From NCBI GenBank assembly GCA_963924565.1, contig OZ004608.1, positions 4,836,001 to 4,900,000 on the forward strand: a stretch of DNA of 64,000 bases, in the 5' to 3' direction. A program made the position numbers and the translations under genes. Below are positions 12,722 through 45,400 of the stretch, in pieces; position 1 is the first letter of the stretch; each line of letters opens with the position of its first letter. Under the pieces are notes generated by a model. The model was given only the letters and a program-made list of their open reading frames with translations, made no database searches and was not told where the DNA came from. This DNA is from Ascidiella aspersa. Lineage: Eukaryota.

Positions 12722-12901
12722 CTGGTCTAGAATCCTACAACATTTATACTACCAAAATTACACTACCAAATCAAGTTGTCATAGTTGAAATTGCAAGAAT
12801 GGCATATATATTTAAGAATAAACCAAACCCAAACTCTCGCCCTAACCAAATAATGTTAGCAATATAACCCCCGACGAAAATGTGGTACGATTCTAGACCA
12901 G
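12722..12901. mobile_element. Small non-autonomous element with CTGGTCTAGAAT inverted ends and CCCTAACC core
   Basis: ctggtctagaatcctacaacattt ... aaatgtggtacgattctagaccag. A partial second copy lies at ~27084-27153 in TRMU intron 1. Confidence 0.6.
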
Positions 12902-13191
12902 CCCCAACTTTTCTATTAGATCAAGCGAGGATTAATTTATAAGCTGTAGTAAATATAGATCAGTTAGTTTGCCATATCGTTAACAATAACTCACACCCAA
13001 ATTGTCCCAGAACAATACTCAACATTAGAAGGTAAGTTTTTGCCCGAAAATTCGGTCACAGTGCTAGGCACCCCCCACCCCCCAAAAAATAAAAAATAGT
13101 GCTAATTTAGGGAAATTACGCCACGGCATTGTAACACCTCATTTTGATCAGTAGAAAACGCGCAATTCAAATTCGCGCCACAAAATAAAGT

Positions 13192-26100: not shown

Positions 26101-27249
26101 ATGATTTGCTGATAAAAAAAACAACTTAACATTGAGATCAGTACTTCTAAAGCCTAAAAATATCTACAATTTAGGTTAAAAAGATTAAAAGCTTTTTTTT
26201 AAAAACATATAATAGTGCAATTTATGTACCAAGAACTAATTTTTACACTAAATTTATAACTTACAGTGTTGGAACAGGCATAGGCCCCAAAATAACCAAT
26301 AAATAATAATATTATAACAATTATCTGTTAAAGTTATTATACCTTTCTGTTTATTGAAAACTTTTTCTCCAATGGTGGTTCTTGCATAATGACCAGTTGC
26401 AACAATAACATCTTGGCTATCGACAATCCTTTGACACTTCTTGTGGAAAGCATCAAACTTGACGTGTTTATTGCACAAAACATCAGGGTTTGGTGTTTGA
26501 CCATTAATAAAACTGGCAAGTGTTGGTTCAAACACATCAAGCCAATATTCTTTCACCAGGTTTACCTAAATAATAATAGAAAGTAACCAATATTTATTGT
26601 TTAAAGTTAGTCAGAGTGGAAAAACAATATTTAGTTAGTAGAATGTTTTTATAATGTTTTTGCAATATATTTATTTAAAATTTTAGATAATTTTTTTGGA
26701 ATTTTTAAAATGAAAAATTTATTACGTAGAATTTTGAAAAACGTTGCAGGATAATAATTTTTTTGGTAATGTTATACTTTACCTCATGAAATGGTATTTC
26801 AAGGTTTTTGCAAACTTTTTGAGCGTATATTTTATCCTCATCATTTCCACAACTTCCCAATTCATCACGGATGTCCCAATTTCTCATAAAAACACCAACG
26901 ACATCCAGACCTAAAATTGGAAATCATACAATTGAGGTATACATTAAGTATGTCTAGTTACATTTTTTATAAATTTATAAAAAATGTATTAATTCCAATA
27001 TGATGTATATCAATTATTTTATGATGTTTTATTTTTTCAATGCAAAATTGCAAAGGACTGAATAAATATAATAATAAAATTTCACCCTAACAAACCCGCT
27101 CCCTAACCCAAATTATGTTAGCCCGAAAAAAATTTGGTGGGATTCTAGACCAGCGTCAAAGTTTGTTTACCTTTGCGTTTCATTAGCAATGCAGCTACCG
27201 CGCTATCAACGCCGCCAGAAATGGCACAAATAACCTTTCCGAACGACAT
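23165..27249 (-). CDS. TRMU: Mitochondrial tRNA-specific 2-thiouridylase 1 (MnmA family)
   Basis: Exons 27249-27171, 26910-26783, 26565-26343, 26062(or 26056)-25998, 25790-25626, 25248-25078, 24771-24630, 24049-23967, 23410-23165. Motifs SGGVDS (PP-loop), GVFMRNWD, TPNPDVLCN, ATGHYA, KDQTFFL, ESMGICFIG, YTIGQR, RAITPGQ, ECLGG are all intact. Confidence 0.96.
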
Positions 27250-27683
27250 TTCACATATTTTCATATAAATTATCGCCCGGGAGTATTTAAATTATTTTGA
27301 AAATCCTTGGAAGTCAAAACAGAAAAGAAAAATAAATAAAAATAATCTGATCGAAATCGGTTATAAAGCAAGTCAGGTTGAACAGCGGCCATATTGCTTC
27401 TTCTTCATTTAGCAAGCGTAAAAGGGCATTTGCGTCAATCGAAAATGTTTAAGTTAAAGTTCCCAGACGTGTAATATCTTAAAATGTTTAAGAAATAAAG
27501 AAAAAAAACGCAACATGAGCAATTTGTTGTGAAAACTAAAAACCCCCGTAATATTTACGCAAACGTCAAAGGCAAAAGGAGATATTTCAAAAAGAAATCG
27601 CCCATCTTTTTTTGAGAAATCGCTCGCGCGTGAAGCGCTGATCACGTGGTTAGTCAAGCAGGTCCAGTAAAAACGAACGTCAG
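27250..27683. promoter_or_regulatory. Probable bidirectional promoter shared by TRMU and the MULE-derived gene
   Basis: Divergent ATGs only ~760 bp apart; CpG-containing patch TCGCTCGCGCGTG, E-box CACGTG (~27643), YY1-like GCGGCCATATTG (~27385); candidate 5'UTR donor after 27683 and acceptor at 27989. Confidence 0.55.
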
Positions 27684-28013
27684 GTATCAAAAGACCGACT
27701 TGTTTAAAACCTGCTTGAAAGTCAATCAGTTACTCCTTCTGCATAGCATTTTTCGAGCTAATTTAAAGTAAAATTGTTAACCATACTGTTACATAAGTGA
27801 TTTAGTGTTGTTCAATAGAGTAGTTAAAATATTGACTGTTTATTTGATGGAAGCATGAATGTTTCATGCTGTCATTCGGACGAAAATTTATACGCGAAGG
27901 CCTGACGTGTTTTTTGTCTTGTTTTTGGTTTTTAGGCGGTAAGTCGTTAGTAACGAATCCACACTTTTATATGTTTTTCGCAGTTTTAGGCCGAAAAAAA
28001 AACCGCTGGAACA

Positions 28014-31000
28014 ATGGCCGTGGCCAAACCGAATGCGTCGTTTACCTTCACTATTAAAGTGACAGGGGACGAGCCGTCGGATAGTGACACAAACGAGCAA
28101 GAGTTTAAGTTCGATTTAACACCACCCCCAAAACCGAAAAAGCGTAGGGGCAGGCCCCCCTTGAAGAAGGTCAGCGGGCAAGATTCGTCCTTTACGTTTC
28201 CCATCGAAGGTGGTAAGCCTGGCAGACCCAAACGGAGGAACAGGCGACTGCCGTTGAAGCTTCGACAGCAAATCATAAAGAAAGAGATTATTGTTCCACC
28301 GGAACCGGCTGGTGCACAGGTAACAACTTTCATGACTGATTGTTTCGCTGCCTCTGTAGTAAATGATTCTAAAAATGCCCTGGCATTACTGGCTTCATAA
28401 TTTGTTGCTGCCAAAGATTCTGGCAAAATATTTTTCACAGAAACTCTACGAAAATTCTGCAATTATTTAACAGGGTGATATATTTTTTGTAACACGGTGA
28501 TGTATTTTTTGCCTGTCACGGGCTTGGATCTTGACTACTTTTATTGTCAAAGGTTTTTGCAGTAAGGCACTGAAATGCAATCTGGCCTTGTATAAGTAGA
28601 AAAATTGGCGCTCTTTCACTAATGTACGTAAAAATTAATAAAAAAAAAACTTTCTTTAAATGCCGCATACCACAACGCATATTGTTTGGGTTAGGGTGCG
28701 GGTTAGCGTTTGGTTGAGGGTGGGTCAAGTTATTATTAATACTAAACATAATATTACTTGACCCACCTTCACCCAAACGCTAACCCGCGCCCTAACCAAA
28801 ACAATATGCATTGTGGTAAGCGGTATTATTTTGTTTTGTTTTTTGCATAAATTTTCACGTACAATAGTGAAAGAGCGCCGGAAAGGCACTAAAATGCAAT
28901 CGGGCCTTAGGAACATTTATAACGTTTCTTCACTCTTCTTTGTTTACTTTTATAAACATTATAGTTAGTGGGAGTTTGGGTAAAATTTTGAATATTGTCA
29001 CCAGAATGTTATGCAGATATCTATTAATAGGTAGTTAATTATTAAGTGACCCTTTAAAATGTCAGATAACTCTATCACTTACTCACAGTTTCTGCCATAT
29101 GAGAAAAGTAGTTTTATGTACAAATGTTTTGCATTCGTTTTCAGTGGTTCACATCCGCAGAAGATGCCTACAATGCTATACAAGCATTCCAGGTGTCAAC
29201 TTACACCAAATTCATCAAACATTTTACAGACAGACCAAGTAAGTGCTGTGACTGAAGCAGTAGCAAGTAATTCCCCACTAAAATTAACCACTATGTAGCC
29301 TAATATGCCACATCATGGCTGTTCTTGGCATACAAAGACATTTGACCCGAATCCCAGAGTGAGAGGTCTCAGCATTTTTGCAATTGATTGTATTCTATGT
29401 TGTTTGACTTCTATTTGGCTTTATACTAGCGTCTTCAATGACCACAGTAATTATTGTGTGTACCAACTACCAAGATTTAATTGTAAATATACTCAATAAG
29501 CAATATAAACTGAGTGAAGTGTCTTTGTCTAAAGTTCAACAACTTATAAAGGAAAGTGTTTTAGCAGCCTGCTCTTTAAAAGTTTAAATAAATATTACCG
29601 AAAAACATGCCATCAACAAACTAGGCAGACATTACTCATTATTAAAGCGACTATCACTTAATCTCAATCATTTGAACAATCCAGTTCAATATCATTTGTC
29701 AGTATTACTATTAGTTTCAAATATGAAATAATATTTATATCAGGGTCCAGGGATGTTCGATTATAGCAGATTGGAACCGATACCCGATGCCAACTAGTAT
29801 CGGTACTTATCTGATACTAGGGGGGTGTAGGTGCCAATCTGATACCAAATCAAAATAGGCACATCGCGTGCAGTCGACGAAGCTCCGTATAAACACTTGG
29901 AAAATATGCGGGGATTTTCTTAAATTTCATTTTTTTTTAATTTGTAGAATGAATGTCAAAGTCTGGAAGTAGGTAGCATGGTTGGGTTTAGATAAAGAAT
30001 GAATATCAAAGCCCACACAGAAGTAGGTAGCATTTTAAACATTTATTTTCAAAGAATAAAGATTTATGCGAAACATTAACAAAAAGCTACCTATAGTTTC
30101 AGAATAGTTAATTCTAACTACAACCTCCGGCCAATTAGCCATGATTTGTTACCCAATGCAGCAATTCCTCTGGTATATTTATTAAAACTAGTAGGTTAAC
30201 AACTGGTGTTATTTTGTTTGTTTGAGCATATTTATGCGGCATTGGTATTGGATCCGATTGTAATACTTTATATGTCCAAGATTGGATTATAGCAGGGGGG
30301 TTCTAAACCTTTTTTCCTTTATTACCCATTTCTGTCCAGATCAAATTCCCATTACCCAAAATCTAATTTTATTTATTTTACTCTCTAACTGTACTAAAAA
30401 CATAAAACCCCGGTATTCAACAAAATATAGCTTGCTTGTCTTAACACTAACTCTAAATGTACACTTAGCTATACTACTCCAAATAACTCCACTAAGAATA
30501 CCTTCAAAAATATTCACTAAACCGCTGTAATCGAACTGAACTGATTATGAAAACAATAGCTAGGCTAGCAGATACAAGAAAAATCTTACTATTCATAACA
30601 TAAAAATAAAATATGTGAAACCGGCGACAAAAATGATCACTACGACGAAACAATTCTGAAACCTGTTTGGTTGTTTTGAAAGGGCTCGAAACATCAAAAA
30701 AGTGCAAGTAATAAAGCGACTTTATACCTCTTACAGACTTGTGACATTGTTGTTACATTCATATTTTTAAATATTCTGGTTTAGATAATTACCCACTGCT
30801 ATTCTGAAATTACCCACATATGGGTAAATACCCATAGGTTAAGAACCGCTGGATTAAAGTGTCAAGTTTTGGATATCATTAGTATATGCATATGTGTTTT
30901 TGCAAAGTATTTTCATGTTGAGTGTGATTTTCATTTGTCGCTTTTAGATCCTGCTAAAAGGAAGATACGTTGGCATGACCAAACCTGTACTCCTTACGTT

Positions 31001-34000
31001 ATTACCAAGAGTGAACGCCTAGCATGTCACCACGGAAAAGACCGCAACAAAGCCTACAACGATAAGCGACTACTAAAAAAGGTAGAATATAATTAACTCA
31101 TAAAACATGTAGACCTTAATTATTAGCAGTAAAATGTCTTTTTCAAACTAAAAACAAGTCACATTTTACACGAAATTTGTTATTAAATTTGACTAACTTT
31201 TGTAGGACCATACACACTTCTTGAAGCCAGTGTAAGGACACGTTTGTGCCAGAGCTTGTCTTGGAAACATACATAGTTAATTAAATGCACAGTGTTGTCA
31301 ATATTGTTTTAATTTAACATACTTTTACTTTCAGTATTTGGAGAATCCGAATATGAAGCGCAGATCATTTTCAAAAGGAACAATCAAAACTAACTGTGAG
31401 TCATCAATTGGTATCATGGAAGTCCTGAAGTTTCCAGAATTTGTGGTGAGAAGCCAGTTTGAGCATAATTTGTATTATACATACATATCTGTGGATATAT
31501 ATATGTGTGTGTGTGTTTATAAGTAACTGTTTGCATAAAAAACTGTTTTATATCATGGGAAGATTACCAAATTAAAACTTTTATTTTCTTGCATTAACCA
31601 TAGACCTTTATTTTACCAGGGCAGGCACATAACTATTTATTGGCAACTATTATTTAAAGAACATCAGGCATAAGATAAGGATTTCATAAATAAAATGTTC
31701 AAACAGGAAAATAAACCATTCCAAAAACTTTTTGATTTTGTTTTAGTTGCCTGTGATGACAGAATTCCGCAAAAAGTCGATGAGCAAAGACCTCCGGACT
31801 GCGATCAAGCGTGGCGATGAGATGACAACCGAATATGCTTGTCGTGTAATTTTTCCATCGGAGGACTCACACTCTGGCCACATTATTGGAGAAGTAAGAA
31901 TTACTTGTTTTTTACGCTACAAAGGCGTTCTGGTTTAAATCTTAGGTGTCTTTAAGTTGGCGGAAAACTTTTGTAGTGTGCAGCTCAGGGTTATTTTTCG
32001 ATAAATATTTACGTTAAATAATTATTGAAAAATACACTAGGATTCAATATTCTAGATTCTTAGATAAGAAACCTAATATTATAAAATCCCCTTGGATTCT
32101 ACTTTGAACATCCTTAATTGTTACTATTGCAAGCATTTTAGTAAAGCGCAAGGAAATTGCAAATATTTGCCTTGACTAATAGTATATCACAAAAATCAGC
32201 GAATCATGTTATAAATGTCGCCGACTCAAACATTCTGGAAGCCCCGCGATTTTAAAGTTTCAACAACCCTAACCTTAAAACCTTAACTTTATTTCTCCTA
32301 AAAAAAGTTTTATGATCTCAAACCCATCCATTTTTACAGCACTATATTTCCACGCAGGCTGCCGGACTGAACACCATTGACCATCGGCTAGTGGAGCGAA
32401 TCCACGAGCTAGTGTCCGATGGGATGTACAGCATCCCGGAGCTAAAGAGGAGCCTAGAGTCCTTCGTCAAGCACGAGCTCTTCAAGGAGCATCCTCAACC
32501 TAGTCCCAACAACCGGAGGTTCTTCCCGACCAAGCGCGACATCCGCAACCACAGCTACATGGCTTACGCCAAGCGCATCCTGTCCCAGATCGACCAGGAA
32601 TCGATGCACCTTGTTGTCGATGATTGGAAGAAGTTGTCGCAGCCTAACGACAACATCATCTTCCGTCCGCACGTCACTACCACCAATGATATCGGAGACC
32701 AGGTAGAAATCCATAAAAGTTTACGAAATTAGACGAACATCTTTTTTTAGATGTCATTTAAGCGTAAATCGACCAGTGCTTCCCAATCTCTTTTTTAGTC
32801 CGCGACCCACTTTTATTGCAAGTTATATTGTGCGACTCACAATAAGATAAGACCAAATTGGTTAGCAATAATTTGAAATGCAACTAATTGGAAAAAAGAT
32901 TAGCAGTTACATAAAACCTGTATCTTTACTACTGGCGGTTGGCCTACGTACTGAAATAGTTAATGCGACTAAAAACACATCTAATTGTTACGTTTTTGTT
33001 CATTGATGCCTAAATGTTACTTAATGCAAGTTAATGGTAATGCAATAATTTCCCGATCTAATAGAAAACTGTAACATCTAGAATGCTTCGCGACCCACTG
33101 GTTGGGAAGGCTGATTTGGATCTCTTTCCTAAAGATTTTTAGGCGTTATTCTGACGATTTTTGGTCTTATTACGACACTTTTTTATTTGTTGTGCACTAG
33201 CTTTTACCAGAGTGTAGAAAAATGATCGACTTGGCAATATTGCCACATTTACCGTTTAAATCACGACGTCGACGCTACAACGATTGGGGTATGGGATTTT
33301 TAATAATTTTATTTGTTTATTACGGCATAAAAAACACCAAATGTAACTGCATACAAACACAGGCACAGCGCAAGAAATTACGATAACATTAGGGCGTGAC
33401 GTATACTATTGATTACTTTTTGGCTTTGAGATTCACATATAGTGATAAAACAACACAGCAAAGAAAACACCTTGCATTAGGTTTGAATTCATCTCAAAGT
33501 TATGTTGACCTAAGTAAAAATCCCTTTTAATTTGAAAGGAAATCCCCTTTTTGGAAAAACTATATCATTTTATCGTAGTAAATATTGTTTAAGATATAGA
33601 CATATTTGGGAAAAGCAAAAAAAAAATATCCACTGCTATTACCAGTGAACTAATGTATAGGTCTTTCTCTAGGTGTAACAGTGAACTATAGGAATAATAG
33701 TTCGAAGAATTACCTTATTTAAAGTTATCAGACTTTCAAGGCAAAAATTGATTTAATGGCAAATTGAAGTTAAAAAAAAGTGAAGGTTGTAACTTTAAAA
33801 CTTTAAACCTGAAATAACGGGATAAACAAACTGTTCTCACAGGCTGTTACATTGTGGCATATTGTACAATCCAATACTAAAACAACTGTTGTTTTTGCCA
33901 ACGAGTCGTGGAACAAACGCTTTGCTATCATTCCGACTGGTTTTGTCTTTCCACGCGCTTCTAAAAGTTTATTGATTTTGCGACGCACCAAGCAATTGGA

Positions 34001-37000
34001 ATTTTATTTATTTAATTTTGTCAGAAAAAAGCACAAAATGTAAATCATACTCGAAAACGCAGCGCAAGAAATTAAGATAACCTTTAGGTGTGTGTTTTGT
34101 ACAGGTCGCCATTATCTTATAAAATACATTTCAATACACATTTGTATAATAATAAGCAGTTACAAATCACCTTAAACAGATGACGATACATGTTCGTATC
34201 GAAACGTCTTTATAAAGATGATACCGACGAGCATTTCGGATTCGACATTTATTATTAACCACAGGTTTTATTGTTTTTTGCCAACAGGTTGTGGAACAAA
34301 CGCTGCTCTTCGCTCACCAGTTTTCCTGGCAGCGTAAACTCCTCCAGCGCTACGGACAAACCGTTTCTCTTCTCGACGCCAGCGGAAAGTACTCTGGCTC
34401 TGAGTTCGTACTCCCATTATTCTTCCTCACCGTAAAATCCAACATTGGCTACCAGCTGGTGGGGAGCTTTATAACACAGAATAAAGAGGCTCCCGATATT
34501 GAAGAAGCCCTCAAGGTTTTCCAGCAGTGGTCCACCGAATGGAATCCAACCTTCCTTATGAGCGCAAGAAGTCAAGAGGAAATTCTCAAAATCGAAAGGC
34601 TTTTTCCTGGTAAGACATTTCTGGTGTTATGTTTATAGATCAGCGGTTCTAAATTTCGTTTGTATTGGTTTTTGAATCTACTGTTTATTCTGCACGTTAA
34701 TGGGGGTCACGCGGCTTAGATATTAGCATAAGGTTCGCCTTGAACTAAAATTACTTTTACCAATCAGAACTTCGCCCGGAAAATTCCGGCACGGCGTCTG
34801 CGAATTTCCGGGCATTTTGCAATAATTCAATGAATTAGATAACTTTTATTTATCTTGGCTGATGGCCGTATTTGTCTTAATCAAAAACTGAAAACAAGTG
34901 GCACTGTTGACGAATTGTATTTGATGTTGACCAGCTTTCACACAACCGTGCTTTATCAGGTCAGAATTAGAGAACGGTAAAAAAAAAAAAGTAAAGGCGC
35001 AAGCACATAGAATAAAGAGCGAAAAGCTAGACACAAGCACGCCCCACAAGCACACCTGGGCGAACTATCTAAAAACCACACTTTTAGCAAAAAATATTCC
35101 AAAAATATTAATATTCAGTCGTATTAACATCTAATTGTGGAGATTTTCATTTTTACGATCTAAACTACACGGCATACTAGGTTTCCAAGGCTATAAGGCC
35201 CTGGAAAAATTCGGCCATAAATGTTTTTAAGTTTAAATTTTTGTTATGCTGATAGTGATACCGATCCAGTACCAGTACAGTTTTTGCTGAAAAACAAATG
35301 ACTGAGTCGAGTAAATATGTGCCTTGTGTGTGAGTAGATAAATAAATCGTTTCACTTATGCCGTCGAATTAGGCCCTTCTCTAGTAAACAGCCTTAGGCC
35401 TACAGTACCCTTAATCCGGACCTGATCATGATAATGTTAATTTACAGACTGCCGAGCTCTCCTGTGCGAGTTTCAGGGCGTCGCCGACGCTCAAGGCAAC
35501 ATCGACATGAACGATATGAGCATCGTTAAGGTGGAAACCTTCAAGTTCTCAGCCGTGGAACCGTTTCCCCGTTACAAGGCCGACAAACCGGACAAGCGTA
35601 CTCTGAAGCGAATCGACGAAACTCTGAACAAAATCCGCGACGTTACGATGAAGATTAAAACCAACACGGAACTCCAAGAGGTGAAAGTGAAGAAAGACCG
35701 ATATATCGGTTTACCGATAATATCGGCCAAAATTTTGCTTCTACCGATATATCGGTATCGGTAAATTTGAGACGATACTTTTGCTGATTTTTTTTTATGA
35801 AAATAATTAAATATAGCTTTTACTGAAAAAGAAACAATTTTTTATTTTTGGCACAAAAAAATTTGTTCAACATCATGCAATTTTAAAATAAGGGTTAAAT
35901 AAATGTAGAAAAGCTAGATAAACTGAAATCTCTTTGGATTTTAATTTTTAATAATTGAATTTATTACAATATGCTAGGTGTATAAAAAATCGATATCGGT
36001 ATCGGGTATAGGTTGGCAAAAACATAAAAAAATCGGTTATCGGTATCAGTCTGAAAAAGTAATATCGATCTCTAGGTGGAAGTCCAGCTCAACCGACTCC
36101 TGGAGAAGCTACCGGAGGTTCCGGAGGACACAAAGAAGCCTGATCTCGGCAAGAGGAAAGCGGCGATAACAAACGGCGAAGAAATGGATCCGAAGCGTTT
36201 AAAGACCTCCGCTCCCGTGACCCTTGATTTCAGTAACTACTCCATGCCTGGAGGACACCAACAGGAGGTCCACATCCACTCGCATCCCTTTGAAGATGCA
36301 GGAGGACCCCACCAGGAAGTCCAGATCCCCGCGCATCAGTTCGGAGCGGGCGGGCAGGAGGAAAGTTTACAGATCCAAGACCCGATCGAAATCACTCCGC
36401 ACGTCTCAATCTTCGAGACTTACAACATCTCTTTGAACGAGACTCTGCTGAAAAACGGTCCGCACAATCTTTCCTTACTCCAGCTTAAATCCCTCGAACC
36501 AACGATGAGCGAAGACGAAACCGCGCTGCTCGTTTCGCATGACGCTTCCTTCAAAGTCGGCTGGCTCTACGACGAGATAATCAACAGCTACATGTGGTCT
36601 TTGAGCATTAACCACGAGCATATCATCTACGCTTCATCCACCGTAGCTCAAATCATGGAGCGACGCGGTTCTCTGAAACGCCTTTGGCAGAACGTGTCCT
36701 TAGAAAACAAACACTACATATTTATCCCTTGGAACCCTTCAGGAAGCCACTGGGTCCTATTGGTAGTGCATCTAAAGCGTAAGTGTCTCTTATACCTGGA
36801 TCCGCACCAGATGGTGGACCTCGACGCGAACTCAAACGTCCAAGCAGCCAAGCACTTTGTCGATTTCGCCGTCTTCGCAAAGTTCAAGTTCCGCTTGCGC
36901 TTTGTCGAGAGCCCGGTGCGCTCGCTGCAGCCGGACATGGAGAGCTGTGGCGTGTACATCTGCATGTACGCAAAGTGGCTGGCTTCTGGCGATTCGCTGG

Positions 37001-37251
37001 TCCAAGCGCCCGACAGCAACGGTGAAGAAAACGGCGCCTACAGGCAAAACATTTTGGACGAAATTGCCGGCGACTGTTTGAAGGAGATCCTGTCGAACCG
37101 CGAGGTTTGTAAAGTATGCGACGACAACGCCAAAGCAGACTGGATCCAATGTACCAGGTGCCAGCAGTGGCTGCATATTGAGTGCGTGGGTTTGACCACA
37201 GAACAGGCGCAAATGGTCAAGTATTTTGTCTGTCCACTGATCATCCATTGA
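28014..37251 (+). CDS. CaRF-like / Mutator-transposase-derived protein with AT-hooks, Ulp1 (C48) peptidase and PHD finger (~955 aa)
   Basis: Exons 28014-28319, 29145-29238, 30948-31081, 31335-31445, 31747-31893, 32358-32702, 34288-34609, 35448-35680, 36076-37251, phase-consistent. KRRGRPP AT-hook; CaRF-like IHELVSDG..LESFVKHELF..NRRFFPTKRDIRNH; MULE-like LLFAHQ.WQRKLLQRYG..SLLDA..LPLFFLTVKSN; Ulp1 WLYDEIIN/HWVLLVV/YLDP/QPDMESCG; PHD CKVC..WIQCTRCQQWLHIECVGL..FVC. Confidence 0.88.
28564..28908. repeat. Foldback element: ~130-bp inverted arms with CCCTAACC motifs, bounded by 26-bp direct repeats
   Basis: GGCGCTCTTTCAC...GGGTTAGGGTGCGGGTTAGCGTTTGG..GGGTCAAGT mirrored by ACTTGACCC..CCAAACGCTAACCCGCGCCCTAACC...GTGAAAGAGCGCC; AAGGCACTRAAATGCAATCKGGCCTT at both ends in the same orientation. 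Confidence 0.8.
30293..30851. mobile_element. hAT (Buster/Charlie-like) MITE
   Basis: CAGGGGGGTTCTAAACC/GGTTAAGAACCGCTG; TSD GATTATAG/GATTAAAG; internal ATTACCCA repeats. Confidence 0.8.
35688..36074. mobile_element. MITE (CCGATA/TATCGG-repeat family) occupying essentially the whole last intron of the MULE-derived gene
   Basis: Degenerate inverted ends TGAAGAAAGACCGATAT / ATATCGATCTCTA, subterminal CCGATA/TATCGG arrays at both ends, flanked by 8-bp direct repeats GGTGAAAG (35680-35687) and GGTGGAAG (36075-36082). Confidence 0.8.
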
Positions 37252-38434
37252 TCTACGGGCGTCAGACTTGGCAAATCGAACCGTGGTTTCGCGTGGCTTG
37301 ACCACTGAATGGATGGGGTGTGGTCAAGAGTTGTTAGTCCGGTCCTACTAAAACAAAGCGGTATGTTCAAAAATTGTTAGCACGGCTTCGGCCGGTCGTG
37401 AGTTCGAACCTCACTTCAGAAAGAACCGTGGTTCGGCCATTAGGCCAAGGGATGTTGAAGCAGATTGTTCATGGAAATATTTACTTACGAGCGCTGTTTG
37501 CGAGGGTATGGCATTGAACGACAAGGCGGAATGAATCGTGCCTTTTTGATTTTTACATACCTCTCGCACAACTAATAAGCTAGTGCTTCTTTGCCTTGCT
37601 TAGAACCTCGTGTTCACATTGCTGGATGACAGGCCTGTTTGTATGGTCCGGAATTTTGTTTTAATGCGGGTCCACAAAGTAATACATATTGTGAATTTAA
37701 TGATCTTAGATATTGGTAGTAAGTTCCTTTAAAAGTATCTTAAGTACAGACATTCTTAGTCACATCCAAGTTAGTATGCAGCAGACTCATTTTTCTTGTA
37801 GTGACCCTTGTTATTTTAATTCGTGCAGGCCTGTCGTATGCATAGTTTCCATATTTGAACTCCTAACGCTTCACTTCACAATATTCAGGGATCTAGAATG
37901 GTTCATACTTAAATTTTTTCGCACGTCATACTTAATTAAAAAAAAAGAGGAAACAAACAGTGGTGCACAGGTTGCAAAACGTTGGTCACCTCTACTCTTA
38001 TTCTTATTTGTGCTTCTTTTCTTCTTGCTGAATGATTTTGCGCACGTAACTGTACAGTTATTATCCAGGTGTGGCAAATTTCATTCAAATAAGTGTGTGT
38101 TTTGAAACTGTTCAAGGTGTTTTCTGCGTCCTTATGTTATTACTATTCTGTGAACTTGTTGACTTGTCGCATATTTCATGTGATCTGCCCAGTTCGAAAT
38201 AAATTATTGCCAACGGAAAATCGGTTTGCATAAAAAAAAATATTTTTAATTGGTGAAAACAGTGGCGGAAAATTCGAGTATAGGAGACGTTGTAGATCAC
38301 TGCCTAATTTTTTTTATGGAATCCACCATCAGTTTGCTAAATAAAGGGTTACGCCAGTTAGTGTTTCTCCAAATTTTTTCGCGGCGATACAAATCTTTAG
38401 CTTAAAAAAAAACAATCTTGAGAATACCTTATTC

Positions 38435-39451: not shown

Positions 39452-42400
39452 TTACATTTCCGTTTGATCGACGCTGAGACCTTCAAAGTCAATTCTAGCA
39501 GCCGCCCTTAGAGCTTGAGCTTGACTTGTTCCAGCCATGCTTTGACCAATAGGCGACACAACAGGCAAAGATTTCAGCTTGTTGGCGGTCTCTTCTTCTT
39601 CCACAATCGAATCATTGCCGAGGAATGTGGAAAAAGCCCGGCGTTCTTTGAGGCCCTGGCTCGATTTCGCCTTTCGCCGTTTTCTGGGACTAGAATTGCC
39701 GGGGTTGCGATCGGATTGCCGTTGACCTATTTCTCGCATCAGCGCTGAGCGATGGTCGCGACTTAACGGCGGAAATGTGGAAGTTCCAGGGGAAAGTGCT
39801 GACTTTGTAAGATTATTGTTGTTGTTTAGTTGGTCCTTTTGGTTGTTGGTGCTGTTGTTGTTGTTATTGGTTTCTAATTAATGAAAAGAGAATCTGAATT
39901 TGTATTTCACGTATCGCAAAATAATGATTGATAAAAATAACAGTGTCCTGTAATGCCTGGTCATAAAACTTAAGAGTAGCGTTGTCCCAAAGAGTTTTAA
40001 GGTTGTCTATAATTGCGCATTGGCATAGTACTTTAATAAAGCTACAATAAAAAACAAAAATTGGGAGTTTGTTGGCTATAGTTATCAGTATATTATACGA
40101 TTATGACTTTTCCCTTAGGGGTCCAAATTTCCTCCGAATATTGGCGATAATTAATAATTCCCTGCTTTACCATTAAAAGGAAAAAAAATAGCCCAAGATT
40201 CTAATTAAAAGAGGATACAGAATTTCAGAAGGAGAAGTTCATTTAACGTTTACCTTCTAGGTTTCCGTGTCGTATGTCTTCTGACACGCTTGTAGCCTTA
40301 CAATATTGGCTCGAGGTGTATCTTTAAAAGCAAGAAAAATCAGTGCTCCACAAGTTAAAGCCAATAACAGGTTGGAAGTTGATTAATTTCTGCCTATTAT
40401 AGGCTGGAAATTTGTAATACTTTAATTTAACAATTTGTTATACAGTTTAGCACGGCATTTCTTTTTTACTGTAAAAATTTACAGTTTTTGTCCAACTTGT
40501 GAGCCCATACCAATACTCCTAAATGTGTCCCAAAACACTGTAAACATCATTCCATGTTTTATTGAAATTTGGCATCGCTTTCAGTTCGTAATGCGTCCAT
40601 TATAATATGTAAACCGAAACCCATTCTAGACTCACCGAATCTGTCGATCAATAATACAAGCAGGCCAGGCCAGGCCAGAAAAACAACTAGCCTGTAGTGA
40701 GGTTCGAACTCACGATCTTTGGCCACACCGGGACCTTCACTTTACCTACTGAGCTACACAGGCTCTCATAGAGGAGCGAGTCGAGAAACAACCATACACC
40801 AATGTTTGCTACATTATGTTAGTACAAGCAACTTCATATTGAAGGAGATCTACAGTAGGCTACCATATTATCACACATATGTGTGTGCATCATTCATTGA
40901 ATACCTCAATTATGTTACCACATCCAAGACAAAAACAATTTGCCTTAAAATTAGCCAGTTTAAGGAACCCAATTACTTACTTGATAATGTCTCCCAGCCC
41001 GGCCTGTCTTGACGTGAAGATGACCGCCACAATGATGCCCATAAGGAAGATAAATGTGAAGAAGATAAGAGCTGCCAGCTGGTAAGGATGCCTGCAGACC
41101 GCCGTCATAATCACTGTTGAGGTGGAGTTGCTTTCTTTGGAGACGGTTGAAGGATTAGCTGTGGTAATTTCTGCGTCTGAATAAAATCATAAGTTGCAAA
41201 CAACAAATATTAAACATCAGTTGCAATTAAACACACGAGAGTCTGGGTCAACGAAGCTTTCGAACCATGCATATTTTTGCCTGTAGCAGACAAGAGGTGG
41301 TATGTCAGCCAGGCAACTAAATTCCAGAGGTTGTAAGTTCGAATACAACCGGTGCTCTACACTTGTGTCGAAGTCTAAAGCAGGGTTCTCAAACATTTTC
41401 TAGTTGCGGACCCTTTTGATTTATCCGCATGTATACCGTACCACTAAAAAACTGTTACCCTGAGACAAAGCACGTAGTGCTTTTTGAGTTGCTATCAATA
41501 ATTCTGAGTTGTCTGTAATACGAGTTTAAACTTTAGCCAAAATAAATTTTTGGACCATTAGAGCATAGCATGCCCAATTTCTATAAATAATCCTGGATCA
41601 GAATCAGCCCGATGTTAGAACTGAAATTCACTACAGTTGTTGCGATTAGCCATGTCACAAGGGAATGAAAAAGCTCATTTTTAGGATAATACCTCACAAG
41701 GGCGAAAAATACAGTGTTAAAGAAAATGTTGTTTATGGGGAAAGATTTAATAGTTCGCTTCTTATAATAGCATTCAGGTAATAATACTTGTTGATGTCTA
41801 GCAGCAAACCGTAAACATGCGCAGTATTGTCGTTTTTTAGCTTAAACGCTACAGTTAGTAAGATGTAATCCCCACATCAACGTGACCAACTTTTTCTTAA
41901 ATATTACAAAATAAGTGCCAGAAGAATAACTTGCTCGTGACCCCTGTTTGAGAACCTTGTGTCTAAAGCCATTGGCAGCACTGTGTTTACGTACTTTTAT
42001 CGCTGGTGTCTGTTTTGCTCTCAGCTGTCAAAAACTCTGCAGAAGCAATCAGCTTTGTCCTTTCAAACGTCAGTGGTGAACGTCGTTTTCGATTTGTGTT
42101 GCCTGTGCAATTCTGCAATACAAAAAACGGTGTTGTGACCTGATAAATAAACTAAGTGAGCCACATTTGGACAATACTCTGCGAAGCCAAATTACCAAGT
42201 CTTTGAGGCAAAATATTTTGTCTTGTATTTCCAGGGAAAGGGACAGGGGTGACCAGAGTTCATTGAATTTTTAATTGGGACTATTTTAGGTGGAAAAACT
42301 TAACAATTCTTTATTCAATGTAGGCCCACTGTTTCTGCAAGGCATCGTATCAATGACATTGCATCATTAATCATTACCGTGACGAAGATTTCCTATATAG

Positions 42401-45400
42401 ATTATTGAAACGTCGGTACACTTAATAAAAAAAATTGCAGGAAGAACAATTTTTCAATCACTATTTTTTTATTTCCTGTAATCTTTAAATTATAAAATAT
42501 ATAGCTATGTATAGTTTTGGGGTATAAAATTAAATGCTTTTCTAGTTTTCCATGATAATATTAAAAATAGGCCTTACGCTTACCGTTTTGCAAAGTGGGT
42601 TGGATTTCTGACAGAGTGAGGTAACGCAGTGTATGTAGACCGGCAGGTGATTTTTAGGTGGAAGCCACCGAAACACAATGAAGTCAAAAAACAAGCTGGT
42701 CGAAGTGCGTTTTACTATGTTGGCAAAAACACCACCCGCAAGGCAGCTGAAATTAAGAAGTATTTTGAATTGAACTATAGCCTATATATATGAACTGAGT
42801 CATTCGTTTTCTGTTGAAAATGTTTATTATCTCAATCGGGCTGTTTCTTGCCGGTTTGTTTCATTCATACAATGAAGTATAATAACTGCCTGGTACTGAC
42901 CAGCATAAAAACTGCTGTACGTTGTGTAGAACAAAATTGATAAAAAGACGTAACAGAGCTCCTTAAAACTCTATGCGCTTACCGCTGCAGGCTCGCGACC
43001 CCCAGTTCCGGGAAGTCTTGTTTTACGAACATGAATAGGTTACGGAAAACAACCCCAAAGAAAGATTGTTTTAAATAAAAAAGTGATATTAAAAGTTGAA
43101 ACTATAGACCGCAGTTTATCTTAATCCATCGTTCGCCGAGTAATTTGGTTGATTCGCCGACCCAGTTGGGTTTATTGAGACTGGTTCTAAGTAAGTTCTC
43201 AAAATTAGACCATATTTGAGAAGCAATACAAAGACATGCAATACAGATTACACTCGATTTTATGCCACTGTCTTCATGTGTTTATTTACTTACAGCCGAC
43301 AATAGTTCAGTTAAGATATTTAAGTCGCCAAAGCTTCACTGTTAAAGTTAAAGTATTATTGTCGCCGCGAAAAACAATGTTAAGAAACTCTACTATGGAT
43401 ACACGAGTTTGCACGAAAACTCATAAAACCTTACTTCATGTTGATGATCGGGGCTTGGTGCGGGCTTCCATCCACATAATCACTGAAAGGAGAGGCGACG
43501 CACTTGTGAACGAACAACGACTTGTTGCCTGCCATCTGGGGCGACACACTGACAAGGGCATAGATGGCCTTTCCCACGTCAATGATGGGTCGTTGACCCC
43601 AGGGCTGCTTGGCCTGATCGTCTTTGTAGAGCAGTATTTTAACATTTAAACGGTCCCTTAGCGTTTTGACGCTCCTAATAATAAAACGATGAATTGGTAA
43701 ATTTGTCTGATACTATGAGTAATAAAAAATAAAACGCAAAATATAGAAAGCAAAATATTTTTGTAGTAAATAACCGACTTTAACGAATACCCTTAAGTTC
43801 AGCCCAGGTCATTTGTCCAAAATACCTCTGCCCGAACTACGCAAGTCGTCAAGTCATTTGAAGTCATTTTAAAAACATGACTTAAGGTCAAGTAAGTGCA
43901 CTTAAGTCATTGTTTTCAAATGATTTAGAACACAGAAAGGAAAATTGGTGTTACAAAATTTTTTTTACCATTTTGAACGTTTCGAATAACTCTTTGTTGG
44001 AAACAAATTGAGTTAAATGATACCTATACTTCTGTATGGGCTTTGGTATTCTCAATACGTCAGACTAAACGCAATCCAGTTTTCACAAACTAATAAAGGT
44101 TCCAATTACGAACTTACATATTAACGTAGGGCGTAAAGCTGGCCTTGAAAGCTCCACCGTAGCTGCAAGAAACATTGGCGAGGGGGGCCGCTACCGAGAA
44201 GATGGGGACAGTAGGGTGGTTTACGATGTCGCTGTAAATTGTCGCTGAAACAACACTCTCGCCGTTGGTTGAATTGGTCACGGTCACCCCGCAATCCTTG
44301 AATGGAGTCGGGACAAACAACCTGTAGACACCAATAGCAGAGTTAAGCATTTTCATCAGTGTTGGGGTGTGTTTTCATTCAGTTATGTCTAAAATCGGTA
44401 TAACACACTGTAAATTTTTACTTTTTATATATTAGTTGCGAAAATTTTGCAGCAAAAAGGATACAGAATGGGGCTTGGGATACAAATTTCAGGGCATTTG
44501 CAATTGCAGGATTTTCCTCTTTCAGAAAACAGTTCTAAAACCAACTAAATATGTACTAGCTATGCATCATTATCATTTAGTTATGTTTCGACTTAACGTT
44601 TTAGTAACCTGTAAACTTTGACGTTATTGCTGTTGACCGTAGTCGCGTTGGCGCTACAACTGACGTTGGATGAAAATCCAGCAAAATATACTTCGATTGT
44701 GTTATTTCCAAGATTCAAGTGATTGGCATCTATGAGACTGGGAAGTAATTCGACAGTCATACCAGTTGCGGTGCAAACCACCTTGCTAGTGCCGTTTGAC
44801 GCAGCTGGCGTTGGCAATGGCGTGGTCTGATATTTTGTGGTCGCACCAGCAGCAGTGGTCGTCGCATCAGCAGTCGACGCAGTGGTCTGGGCCTTGGTCG
44901 TCGCACCCGCAGTAGTGGCAGTGTCAGTGGTCTGGGCCTTGGTTGTTGCAGTGGTCGCACCAGCAGTACTGGCAGTGGTCACACCAGCAGTAGTGTTAGT
45001 GGTCACACCAGCAGTAGTGTTAGTGGTCACACCAGCAGTAGTGTTAGTGGTCACACCAGCAGTAGTGTTAGTGGTCACACCAGCAGTAGTGTTAGTGGTC
45101 ACACCAGCAGTAGTGGCAGTGGTCACACCAGCAGTAGTGGCAGTGGTCTGTGCCTTGGTTGTTGCAGTGGTCTGTGCCTTGGTTGTTGCAGTGGTCGCAC
45201 CAGCAGTCGTGGCAGTGGTCGCACCAGCAGTCGTGGCAGTGGTCGCACCAGCAGTCGTGGCAGTGGTCGCACCAGCAGTCGTGGCAGTGGTCGCACCAGC
45301 AGTCGTGGCAGTGGTCGCACCAGCAGTCGTGGCAGTGGTCGCACCAGCAGTCGTGGCAGTGGTCGCACCAGTAGTCGTGGCAGTGGTCTGGGCCTTGGTT

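What the first reader, a model, noticed from the sequence alone, without database searches (positions are those of the whole stretch)
28014..37251. Domesticated Mutator transposase fused to an intact Ulp1/SUMO-type protease and PHD finger (CaRF-like chromatin factor)
Seen: an uninterrupted 9-exon ORF with no TIR/TSD evident around it. The CaRF-like region keeps candidate zinc ligands (LACHHG, KTNCES, HSGH). The MULE core keeps the first Asp (LLDAS), but the second catalytic Asp is lost (FLMSA where FMTD is expected), the CxxH motif reads LCEFQ, and the downstream half with the catalytic Glu and SWIM finger is missing. The C48 protease retains W, H, D, Q and C (GWLYDE, SHW, YLDP, QPDMESCG). Two AT-hook-like motifs sit at the N-terminus. 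Known: some Mutator-like elements carry Ulp1 proteases, and MULE transposases have been domesticated as transcription factors (FAR1/FHY3). Inference: a host gene encoding a DNA-targeted deSUMOylase or other Ubl protease. It would also link the CaRF domain to a MULE transposase N-terminus.
Basis: partly seen in the sequence, partly recalled or inferred. Interest (0 to 1): 0.8.

Follow-up and report, generated by a model that had tools for sequence, protein, structure and literature searches.

The report
Tamed transposase keeping a SUMO-type protease
A single-copy, expressed gene in what is probably a sea-squirt genome is a disarmed Mutator-type transposase that kept its DNA-binding, SUMO-protease-like and histone-reading parts. 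Its still-mobile parent transposon sits in the same genome, so the tamed and wild forms can be compared side by side.

Summary
Window 28014-37251 (+) is a 9-exon, about 955-codon gene. A spliced transcript contig supports five junctions, and stranded RNA reads cover the exons only. Pfam, run exon by exon, finds ALS2CR8/CaRF, half of a MULE RNaseH-like core, Peptidase_C48 and a PHD finger.

The new result is the parent. The same genome holds five roughly 10.5-kb, about 99% identical elements with about 43-bp TIRs, copy-specific 9-bp TSDs and a 3' minisatellite (Rehavkus-like MULE). Their transposase already carries ALS2CR8, MULE DDE, SWIM, C48 and PHD. The "fusion" is therefore native to the transposon, and the CaRF domain is a MULE N-terminus.

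The window gene has no TIR or TSD. It lacks the second Asp, the CxxH motif and about 300 residues that hold the Glu and the SWIM finger. It keeps all C48 catalytic residues, and its model matches Ulp1 at Z 22.

It shares the deletion with four tandem paralogs on another contig (dN/dS 0.09-0.17 among them). It gained a new AT-hook first exon and two introns, and shifted to GC3 0.62 against 0.36. It lies head-to-head with TRMU. All 12 listed exonic polymorphisms are synonymous.

Domestication is well supported. DeSUMOylase activity, the DNA targets and cross-species synteny are untested. Another Rehavkus-like protease-bearing transposon was noted elsewhere in this genome (s1-801662).

The parts
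27292..28013 (.). Intergenic stretch shared head-to-head with TRMU; presumed bidirectional promoter region
   Evidence: The TRMU first coding exon with SGGVDS lies at 27148-27291 (-) and a tRNA_Me_trans exon at 26257-26565 (-). The gene's ATG is at 28014 (+). Promoter function is inferred.
28014..28319 (+). Exon 1: start codon and two AT-hook-like motifs (RRGRPP, KPGRPKR); an exon specific to this gene
   Evidence: First ATG of the open frame 27990-28397. Phase-0 donors exist at 28170 and 28320. 28320 is preferred because the frame stays open and GC is 0.53, against 0.33 in introns. No homolog in the C1 paralogs or the transposon copies. Not covered by the reads call.
29145..29238 (+). Exon 2: start of the ALS2CR8-type DNA-binding region (WFTSAEDAYNAIQAF...)
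   Evidence: Matches the transposon exon (37% over 30 aa, E 1e-5) and the ascidian proteins. Splice sites.
30948..31081 (+). Exon 3: ALS2CR8 profile positions 6-56, LACHHGKD motif
   Evidence: Pfam; 46% identical to the transposon exon; splice sites.
31335..31445 (+). Exon 4: ALS2CR8 profile positions 53-91, KTNCES motif
   Evidence: Pfam; piece of the transcript contig.
31747..31893 (+). Exon 5: ALS2CR8 profile positions 94-143, HSGH motif
   Evidence: Pfam; transcript contig.
32358..32702 (+). Exon 6: C-terminal, helical part of ALS2CR8 (profile positions 175-229)
   Evidence: Pfam 45 bits; 44% identical to the transposon; transcript contig; four synonymous polymorphisms.
32703..34287 (+). 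Intron 6, gained in this gene's lineage; holds very high-copy repeats
   Evidence: The C1 paralogs and the transposon are continuous coding sequence across this point. DNA-run depth spikes at 32860-33259 and 34060-34259.
34288..34609 (+). Exon 7: N-terminal half of the MULE RNaseH-like core; first Asp kept (LLDAS), second lost (FLMSA)
   Evidence: 55% identical over 106 aa (E 5e-40) to the transposon's domain, which itself scores 41 bits on PF10551 MULE. Four synonymous polymorphisms.
35448..35680 (+). Exon 8: degenerate CxxH site (LCEFQ), then the linker that follows the roughly 300-residue deletion
   Evidence: Aligned to the transposon's PDCRVLICDFH and to the C1 paralogs; transcript contig.
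35681..36075 (+). Intron 8, gained in this gene's lineage; a high-copy repeat (the MITE intron of finding s1-790855)
   Evidence: Boundaries from the transcript contig. The C1 paralogs are continuous across this point. DNA depth 12,000-34,000 at 35660-35859.
36076..37251 (+). Exon 9: disordered linker, Ulp1/SENP-type C48 domain (about 36385-37080), PHD finger (about 37102-37248), stop codon
   Evidence: Pfam C48 and PHD. SENP2 alignment with W, H, D, Q and C in register. AlphaFold2 model with pLDDT above 90 over residues 100-390; Ulp1 Z 22.3, rmsd 2.2 A, 197 residues aligned.
37252..38211 (+). 3' UTR; its end is estimated
   Evidence: The transcript contig runs 956 nt beyond 37255. The reads call ended at 37255, so collinearity beyond that point was not seen.

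Best explanation
This is an exapted (domesticated) derivative of a Rehavkus-like Mutator (MULE) transposase. The parent transposase, still mobile in this genome, is one polypeptide. It has an ALS2CR8/CaRF-type DNA-binding N-terminus, a DDE RNaseH core with CxxH and a SWIM finger, a Ulp1/SENP-type C48 cysteine protease, and a C-terminal PHD finger.

An ancestor of the window gene and of four tandem paralogs lost about 300 residues that hold the catalytic Glu and the SWIM finger. It also lost catalytic residues, so it cannot cut DNA. The window copy then became an ordinary host gene. It has no TIR or TSD, a new AT-hook first exon next to the TRMU promoter, two new introns, host-like GC-rich codons, expression and ongoing purifying selection.

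Proposed working (inferred). The AT hooks and the zinc-binding ALS2CR8 domain place the protein on specific DNA. The PHD finger reads a histone tail; its nearest solved relatives are H3K4me3-reading ALFIN and BPTF fingers. The intact C48 domain removes SUMO (or NEDD8 or ubiquitin) from chromatin-bound substrates nearby. The retained half of the RNaseH core serves as a scaffold. Because the DNA-binding domain is shared with the active transposon family, sites related to that transposon are plausible targets.
For: Shown:
- Gene model and expression: spliced 3849-nt contig, and exon-only stranded RNA coverage.
- Domains. The exon 9 model matches Ulp1 at Z 22.3, SENP1/3/5 at Z about 20 and NEDP1 at Z 19.4. 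The catalytic W/H/D/Q/C residues align with SENP2.
- Parent element: four copies are 99% identical over 10.5 kb, with copy-specific 9-bp TSDs, about 43-bp TIRs and a 79-bp minisatellite. Its TIR occurs at nine places, which makes five elements. Pfam finds ALS2CR8, MULE (41 bits), SWIM, C48 and PHD on its exons.
- No copy of the window gene above 67% identity in the genome. No TIR in the window.
- The deletion breakpoint is shared with four C1 paralogs, which have also lost D1 and D2. The five form a 100/100 clade.
- dN/dS among the C1 paralogs is 0.09-0.17, and their nucleotide similarity is confined to coding parts.
- All 12 exonic polymorphisms listed between samples are synonymous. If about 3 in 10 random coding changes are synonymous, the chance of this is about 5e-7 (own arithmetic).
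- GC3 is 0.62, against 0.34-0.39 in the paralogs and transposons; intron GC is 0.33.
- Exon 1 has no homolog in the relatives. Introns 6 and 8 are absent from the relatives.
- TRMU lies head-to-head about 760 bp away.
- Similar ALS2CR8-C48(-PHD) genes are annotated in Ciona, Phallusia and Clavelina.
Against: - No ortholog or synteny in another species could be shown.
- The C48-PHD tree cannot say whether the clade arose from this genome's transposons or shares an origin with the Ciona-type genes (AU p 0.39 and 0.69).
- Enzyme activity, substrate (SUMO, NEDD8 or ubiquitin), DNA binding and histone reading are all untested.
- The PHD finger has seven canonical ligands. The eighth is non-canonical here (His391) and absent in several relatives.
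- The E1-E2-E3 junctions were not read-verified.
- RNA depth is modest (2-8x from about 6% of one run).
- The tool did not show 35 variant rows, so non-synonymous polymorphisms may exist.
- Low dN/dS between old paralogs is also seen between active transposon families (0.10), so that measure alone is not diagnostic.
Confidence: 0.72

Rival explanations
1. The gene is a domesticated transposon regulator, not a general chromatin factor. A truncated transposase that keeps the family's DNA-binding domain could sit on the ends of the active Rehavkus-like elements. There it would either block transposition (like a truncated-transposase repressor) or carry the protease to them.
For: The ALS2CR8 region is homologous to that of the active elements in the same genome (33-46% identity per exon). 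The catalytic core is lost while the DNA-binding part is kept under constraint. The truncated form exists as five paralogs alongside at least three active or recent subfamilies. Independent truncations with other breakpoints occur in other ascidians.
Against: The DNA-binding region has diverged strongly from that of the active family, so shared target sites are not assured. No element end or subterminal repeat was tested for binding. The new AT-hook exon and the GC3 shift suggest a role that has moved away from the transposon.
Confidence: 0.25
2. The locus is only an immobilised, non-autonomous relic of a MULE. It happens still to be open and transcribed and has no host function.
For: Its whole architecture is that of a transposon protein. 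The genome is full of decayed relatives. No conservation in another species has been shown.
Against: The ORF is intact across 9 exons although synonymous sites are saturated against its nearest paralogs. All 12 listed polymorphisms are synonymous. The catalytic C48 residues and the PHD ligands are kept in all five clade members. There are no TIRs. It has a new first exon, new introns and a codon shift.
Confidence: 0.08
3. The C48 domain is not a SUMO protease. It is a deNEDDylase or deubiquitinase, or a non-catalytic Ubl-binding module.
For: NEDP1/Den1 matches almost as well as Ulp1/SENP (Z 19.4 against 22.3). CE-clan enzymes acting on ubiquitin are also among the matches. A Phallusia relative (LOC100179154) has lost the catalytic His and Cys, so non-catalytic use occurs in this family.
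Against: The best sequence and fold matches are all SUMO proteases: Ulp1 and SENP1/2/3/5. His, Asp, Gln and Cys are all present in the window protein.
Confidence: 0.3

Closest known systems
Rehavkus group of Mutator-like transposons (Repbase; summarised in Dupeyron et al. 2019, PMC6446971)
   Same: [quoted passage not shown]
   Different: That paper reports Rehavkus only from insects and annelids. The host here is probably a tunicate. No reference Rehavkus transposase was available for a tree. The window gene itself is not an element: it has no TIR or TSD and no complete DDE.
FHY3/FAR1 and MUSTANG: plant genes domesticated from MULE transposases
   Same: A MULE transposase turned into an immobile, constrained nuclear gene that keeps its N-terminal zinc DNA-binding domain.
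   Different: By established knowledge, those proteins keep the whole core domain and the SWIM finger and have no protease. This gene lost the second half of the core and the SWIM finger, and kept a C48 protease and a PHD finger.
Plant MULEs and CACTA elements carrying ULP1-like domains (Benjak et al. 2008, PMC2528002; van Leeuwen et al. 2007, cited there)
   Same: A Ulp1-type protease domain travels with a Mutator-like element. Benjak et al. note an 'affinity' of the ULP domain for transposons.
   Different: Those authors describe the plant cases as transduplicated host fragments. Here the protease is in frame at the C-terminus of the transposase, in animals, and the derived gene has lost the transposase function but kept the protease.
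Zisupton (zinc-finger SUMO-protease transposon of fish)
   Same: A DNA transposon whose protein ends in a Ulp1 SUMO-protease domain. By my recollection of Bohne et al. 2012, relatives are reported in urochordates.
   Different: Zisupton makes 8-bp TSDs and belongs to the KDZ group (PMC12730594). The element here makes 9-bp TSDs and scores on Pfam MULE PF10551.
Vertebrate CARF / ALS2CR8 (calcium-responsive transcription factor; Pfam PF15299)
   Same: The same Pfam domain covers exons 3-6 and the N-terminus of the active transposase.
   Different: Orthology to vertebrate CARF was not tested. Whether CARF descends from such a transposase, or the transposon captured the domain, is not decided here.
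Uncharacterised ascidian genes: Ciona intestinalis LOC100185158, its Phallusia mammillata counterpart, P. mammillata LOC100179154, Clavelina lepadiformis LOC143453306
   Same: ALS2CR8, linker helix, C48 and (in most) PHD, with no DDE core.
   Different: They lack the whole RNaseH part, so the deletion breakpoints differ. They are only 35-43% identical in C48-PHD, and a common origin is neither supported nor rejected. LOC100179154 has lost the catalytic His and Cys.

Membership tests
Active MULE/Mutator element | Terminal inverted repeats and a 9-11 bp target site duplication around the locus | tested here: not met
   No flanking inverted repeat beyond AT-rich chance pairs. The TIR of the related family is absent from the window. 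Blastn with the element's ends finds nothing.
Active MULE/Mutator element | Complete DDE triad with the CxxH motif (and a SWIM finger in this lineage) | tested here: not met
   D1 is kept (LLDAS). D2 reads FLMSA where the transposon has FFMTD. CxxH reads LCEFQ where the transposon has ICDFH. About 300 residues holding the Glu and the SWIM finger are missing.
MULE-derived protein (homology) | Significant similarity to a bona fide MULE transposase core | tested here: met
   Exon 7 is 55% identical over 106 aa (E 5e-40) to the core of an element with TIRs and TSDs, which scores 41.2 bits on PF10551 (cut-off 27.6). Exon 7 alone is below the Pfam cut-off (21.5 against 27.2).
Rehavkus group (the parent element, outside the window) | 9-bp TSD, PHD finger in the transposase, minisatellite before the 3' TIR | tested here: met
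   Four copies have perfect, different 9-bp TSDs. A PHD finger ends the 655-aa last exon. A 79-bp tandem array lies between the ORF and the 3' TIR. The criteria are taken from PMC6446971.
Rehavkus group (the parent element) | Transposase groups with reference Rehavkus transposases in a tree | not tested
Peptidase C48 (Ulp1/SENP) | Pfam family score above the curated cut-off, and the Ulp1 fold | tested here: met
   PF02902 at 40.9 bits, cut-off 20.7. The model matches Ulp1 at Z 22.3, rmsd 2.2 A, with 197 of 221 residues aligned.
Peptidase C48 (Ulp1/SENP) | Catalytic His, Asp and Cys plus the oxyanion Gln and the tunnel Trp | tested here: met
   In the HMMER alignment to SENP2 (1TGZ), GWLYDE pairs with HWLNDE, SHW with VHW, YLDP with YLDS, and QPDMESCG with QLNGSDCG.
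Peptidase C48 (Ulp1/SENP) | Isopeptidase activity on SUMO | not testable with these tools
   This needs an enzyme assay.
PHD finger | Cys4-His-Cys3 zinc ligands | tested here: inconclusive
   PF00628 at 31.8 bits, cut-off 24. C345, C348, C359, C362, H367, C370 and C386 are conserved. The eighth ligand is not canonical: His391 lies at +5 in the window protein, and several paralogs end right after Cys-Pro.
ALS2CR8 / CaRF domain family (PF15299) | Match to the family profile | tested here: met
   Four exons match collinearly over profile positions 6-229 of 235 (22.1, 25.7, 19.4 and 45.0 bits; cut-off 28.9, passed by exon 6 alone). The joined protein was not scored.
Domesticated (exapted) transposase gene | Immobile and single copy, intact ORF older than the current transposon copies, purifying selection, expression | tested here: met
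   copy number; dN/dS and saturation; 12 of 12 synonymous polymorphisms; expression and splicing.
Domesticated (exapted) transposase gene | Orthologs at the syntenic site in other species | not testable with these tools
The species and its close relatives are not in the protein libraries (best external identity 45%).
Zisupton | 8-bp TSD | tested here: not met
   The related active element has 9-bp TSDs. Zisupton makes 8-bp TSDs (PMC12730594).

The most novel reading that the evidence does not exclude
The ALS2CR8/CaRF DNA-binding domain is the native N-terminal DNA-binding domain of Rehavkus-type Mutator transposases. If so, vertebrate CARF would itself be a tamed transposase. Tunicates would also have repeatedly tamed the 'DNA-binding + SUMO-protease + PHD' remainder of these transposases, by independent deletions of the DDE core, into sequence-targeted chromatin deSUMOylases that may act on, or have grown out of control of, the parent transposons.
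Probability: 0.35. Interest if true: 0.75.

Novelty: new variant of a known kind. Interest (0 to 1): 0.6.

Why it matters
Domesticated transposases are well known. It is rare, however, to have the tamed gene, older tamed paralogs and a recently mobile parent element together in one genome. This makes each step readable: core deletion, loss of catalytic residues, a new first exon, intron gain and a codon shift.

The case differs from FHY3/FAR1-type domestication. The transposase core was discarded, and an accessory enzyme (a Ulp1/SENP-type protease) and a histone reader were kept. This points to a transposon-borne chromatin-modifying activity, possibly anti-silencing by deSUMOylation, that a host could reuse.

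It also shows directly that the CaRF/ALS2CR8 domain sits at the N-terminus of a working MULE transposase. I found no paper in the searched library that holds both 'ALS2CR8' and 'transposase'. It further documents recently mobile Rehavkus-like MULEs in a probable chordate; Dupeyron et al. [quoted passage not shown]

Tried and rejected
- Flanking TIRs and TSDs were searched three ways and none was found. There is no minisatellite.
- Zisupton was rejected for the parent element: 9-bp rather than 8-bp TSD, and a Pfam MULE hit.
- Orthology with Ciona LOC100185158: the AU tests reject neither that grouping (p 0.69) nor grouping with this genome's transposons (p 0.39). It is left open.
- A word search with the ALS2CR8 region of the Phallusia protein gave only 2 hits, so no vertebrate CARF was obtained. 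The test of whether CARF keeps a MULE core remnant was not run.
- WRKY/GCM1/FAR1-like fold of the ALS2CR8 zinc region:
  - A profile search against PDB returned only SENP and PHD matches.
  - Pfam at E up to 10 showed no FAR1 hit.
  - In the fold search with the 647-residue Phallusia model, the C48 domain filled the list. Only weak helix-turn-helix and transposase DNA-binding matches (Z 5.8-5.9) appeared for residues 194-274.
  - The ESM Atlas gave GCM and ZSWIM3_N/FAR1 clusters at 0.82-0.86, which are leads only.
  - The question is not settled.
- dS between the window gene and its paralogs could not be estimated (pS 0.91-0.97). This is a composition shift, not a usable distance.
- The spliced exons were never joined.
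Full report
OBSERVATION. The + strand of window 28014-37251 carries nine open pieces that join with GT-AG introns and consistent phases into about 955 codons:
- E1 28014-28319
- E2 29145-29238
- E3 30948-31081
- E4 31335-31445
- E5 31747-31893
- E6 32358-32702
- E7 34288-34609
- E8 35448-35680
- E9 36076-37251

A 3849-nt contig of run X3 is spliced exactly at the E4-E5-E6-E7-E8-E9 junctions. It carries 553 nt further upstream, enough for E3, E2 and about 325 nt of E1, and 956 nt beyond 37255. Stranded RNA-seq reads of run X4, with about 6% of the run read, lie on exons at 2-8x and at about zero on introns. Their first mate lies on the minus strand, as expected for a plus-strand RNA. I prefer the E1 donor at 28320 over 28170 because the frame stays open for 76 more codons and GC stays exon-like. 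Every search, alignment and fold below used single exons.

DOMAINS. Pfam, exon by exon:
- ALS2CR8 lies on E3, E4, E5 and E6, collinear over profile positions 6-229 of 235. E6 alone scores 45 bits against a cut-off of 28.9.
- ZSWIM1-3_RNaseH-like on E7 scores 21.5 bits, below its cut-off of 27.2.
- Peptidase_C48 scores 40.9 bits (cut-off 20.7) and PHD 31.8 bits (cut-off 24) on E9.

HMMER against PDB chains aligns E9 with SENP2. The tunnel Trp, the catalytic His and Asp, the oxyanion Gln and the catalytic Cys are all in register. The best PHD matches are ALFIN-like 3 and BPTF. An AlphaFold2 model of E9, built with 38 aligned relatives, has pLDDT above 90 from residue 100 to 390 and a disordered linker at 16-89. 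It superposes on Ulp1 at Z 22.3 (rmsd 2.2 A, 197 residues), on SENP1/3/5 at Z about 20 and on the NEDD8 protease NEDP1 at Z 19.4. PHD fingers match the C-terminal part at Z about 5. The PHD finger has seven canonical ligands. The eighth is non-canonical (His391) and is missing in several relatives.

THE PARENT TRANSPOSON. Six-frame searches of the window's own genome with E6, E7 and E9 found no second copy of the gene. The best match is 67%. They did find dozens of loci with the same three pieces in the same order at 42-58% identity. Four of these loci (G000:C2:2.835 Mb, C2:18.02 Mb, C3:11.93 Mb, C3:15.31 Mb) are about 99% identical over 10.5 kb. Each begins GGTAGCAATAGTGACCC and ends in the inverted sequence, a TIR of about 43 bp with two mismatches. 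Each is flanked by its own perfect 9-bp duplication: GAGAAATTT, GCCCGGAAT, GCCATTTGT and AAGATGACC. The TIR core occurs at nine places in the genome, which makes five elements. Between the ORF and the 3' TIR lies a 79-bp minisatellite.

On the element's exons Pfam finds ALS2CR8, MULE (PF10551, 41.2 bits against a cut-off of 27.6), SWIM, Peptidase_C48 and PHD. Its sequence reads LLDAT, FFMTD, ICDFH and a CxC...CxH SWIM motif. This is a recently mobile Mutator-superfamily element. It shows the three structural marks that Dupeyron et al. [quoted passage not shown] The 9-bp TSD and the MULE hit exclude Zisupton, which makes 8-bp TSDs. Two things follow. The protease and PHD finger are native parts of this transposase, not additions made at domestication. 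And the CaRF/ALS2CR8 domain is the N-terminus of a working MULE transposase. An ESM Atlas cluster of 85 mostly cnidarian proteins with ALS2CR8, RNaseH-like and MULE domains shows that this pairing is widespread.

WHAT THE WINDOW GENE LOST AND KEPT. Aligned to the element, E7 is 55% identical over 106 residues (E 5e-40). It keeps the first Asp but has Ala/Ser where the second Asp should be. E8 starts at the CxxH site, which reads LCEFQ, and then runs straight into the linker that precedes the protease in the element. About 300 residues with the Glu and the SWIM finger are gone. The C48-PHD part is 50% identical to the element's.

A CLADE OF FIVE, UNDER CONSTRAINT. Four tandem paralogs on another contig (G000:C1:28.285, 28.295, 28.305 and 28.323 Mb) are the nearest relatives of the window gene, at 65-68% identity in C48-PHD. 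They form a 100/100 clade with the window gene. They share the same deletion breakpoint: their next exon begins LDCYVLSYGF, GCHVLTYGF or LDCRVLTH and then enters the linker. They have also replaced both Asp residues. The catalytic core was therefore already lost in the common ancestor.

Since then the copies have diverged a long way. dS among the C1 copies is 0.5-1.9, and nucleotide similarity survives only in coding parts. Yet dN/dS is 0.09-0.17, and all five keep the C48 catalytic residues and the PHD ligands. Within the species, all 12 exonic differences listed between the four runs are synonymous third-position changes, spread over E5 to E9. If about 3 in 10 random coding changes are synonymous, the chance of that is about 5e-7. 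The tool did not show 35 further rows.

The window copy alone has several further changes:
- a first exon with two AT-hook-like motifs that has no homolog in the paralogs or elements;
- two introns (6 and 8) at points where the paralogs and the element are continuous, both full of very high-copy repeats;
- GC3 of 0.62, against 0.34-0.39 in the paralogs and elements, while its introns stay at GC 0.33, which also explains pS above 0.9 against every relative;
- a head-to-head position about 760 bp from the first coding exon of TRMU.

RELATIVES ELSEWHERE. The best named relatives are ascidian:
- Clavelina lepadiformis LOC143453306
- Ciona intestinalis LOC100185158
- a Phallusia mammillata protein carrying the same LOC100185158 label
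- P. mammillata LOC100179154

Each has ALS2CR8, a linker helix, C48 and usually a PHD finger, and no recognisable RNaseH part. The genome is therefore probably a tunicate's; this is an inference. These proteins lack the whole core, so their deletion has different breakpoints. One of them has also lost the catalytic His and Cys. MULE-C48 transposases also occur in insects, for example the thrips gene LOC113215308. The exhaustive search found nothing above 45% identity. It did not find this genome's own 51% elements either, so the libraries do not hold this species or close kin, and absence of orthologs there means nothing. In the C48-PHD tree the window clade, the local elements plus SWIM-bearing externals, and the Ciona-type genes meet in an unresolved node. 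AU tests reject neither grouping.

HOW IT MOST LIKELY WORKS. Shown: an immobile, expressed, constrained protein with a zinc-motif DNA-binding region homologous to a transposase's, half of a dead RNaseH core, a complete Ulp1/SENP-type active site and a PHD-like finger. Inferred: the AT hooks and ALS2CR8 place it on DNA, the PHD finger reads a histone tail, and the protease removes SUMO (less likely NEDD8 or ubiquitin) from nearby chromatin proteins. In the parent element the same module may counter SUMO-dependent silencing. That idea parallels the proposal that transposon-borne TET/JBP enzymes help fungal elements escape methylation (PMC12730594). It is speculation here. A role in controlling the related active elements is a live alternative.

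COMPARISON AND NOVELTY. The kind of thing, a domesticated MULE transposase, is known from FHY3/FAR1 and MUSTANG. ULP1 domains in plant MULEs and CACTA elements are also known (PMC2528002). What differs here is what was kept and what was thrown away, the animal (probably chordate) host, and the presence of the mobile parent beside the tamed gene. No paper in the searched library holds both 'ALS2CR8' and 'transposase'. Another finding of this scan (s1-801662) reports a different, decayed Rehavkus-like element with Ulp1 and USP proteases elsewhere in this genome. I did not test it.

LIMITS.
- The fold of the ALS2CR8 zinc region was not resolved.
- No enzyme, binding or cross-species data exist.

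Noticed in passing
G000:C2:2835109-2845605, C2:18.02 Mb, C3:11.93 Mb, C3:15.31 Mb, C7:14.54 Mb (outside the window; loci L025/L035, L026/L036, L027/L037, L028/L038): Five roughly 10.5-kb, about 99% identical Rehavkus-like MULE copies with about 43-bp TIRs, perfect copy-specific 9-bp TSDs and a 79-bp minisatellite. They look recently mobile. At least two further subfamilies each have pairs of copies with identical search scores (C4:30.96/C7:10.98 Mb and C1:0.80/C7:19.32 Mb).
   Followed up: yes
G000:C1:28284998-28327014, minus strand (loci L032, L042, L033, L034): Four tandem paralogs of the window gene, about 10 kb apart. They share the same core deletion, have both catalytic Asp residues replaced, keep intact C48-PHD frames and show dN/dS of 0.09-0.17 among themselves. 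Their expression was not checked.
   Followed up: partly
window 35681-36075 and 32703-34287: Introns 8 and 6 are absent from the paralogs and the parent element, so they were gained here. Both hold repeats with DNA-run depths in the thousands. Intron 8 is the 'MITE intron' of finding s1-790855. I confirmed its splice boundaries from the transcript contig but did not analyse its ends or TSD.
   Followed up: partly
window 28014-37251, compared with loci L002-L011: The gene's exons have GC3 of 0.62 (E6 0.77) while its introns are at 33% GC. Its paralogs and the transposons have GC3 of 0.34-0.39. Synonymous sites differ at more than 90% of positions, beyond saturation. The cause of this exon-only shift is unexplained.
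   Followed up: partly
window 26257-27291 (-): TRMU (tRNA 2-thiouridylase; tRNA_Me_trans exon at 26257-26565, SGGVDS first coding exon at 27148-27291) lies head-to-head with the gene, about 760 bp between the start codons.
   Followed up: partly
protein P0027 (Phallusia mammillata LOC100179154): A relative with ALS2CR8, a C48-like domain and a PHD finger has lost the catalytic His and Cys of the protease. This suggests a non-catalytic use of the fold in this family.
   Followed up: no
window 40688-40764 (-) and 37396-37419 (+): A tRNA-Thr(GGT) gene lies downstream. A 24-nt stretch in the gene's 3' UTR is 96% complementary to part of it, perhaps a tRNA-derived SINE fragment.
   Followed up: no
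window 28607-28879: A near-perfect palindromic repeat (arms of 75 nt at 89% and 41 nt at 88%) lies inside intron 1 and looks like a foldback MITE. Related pieces lie at 27069-27160 and 12707-12910 and inside an intron of the active MULE.
   Followed up: no
window 44596-45501, 54946-56010, 59117-59470 (-): Long Thr/Ala-rich tandem coding repeats and an IgGFc_binding (FCGBP/mucin-type) exon: a mucin-like gene downstream.
   Followed up: no
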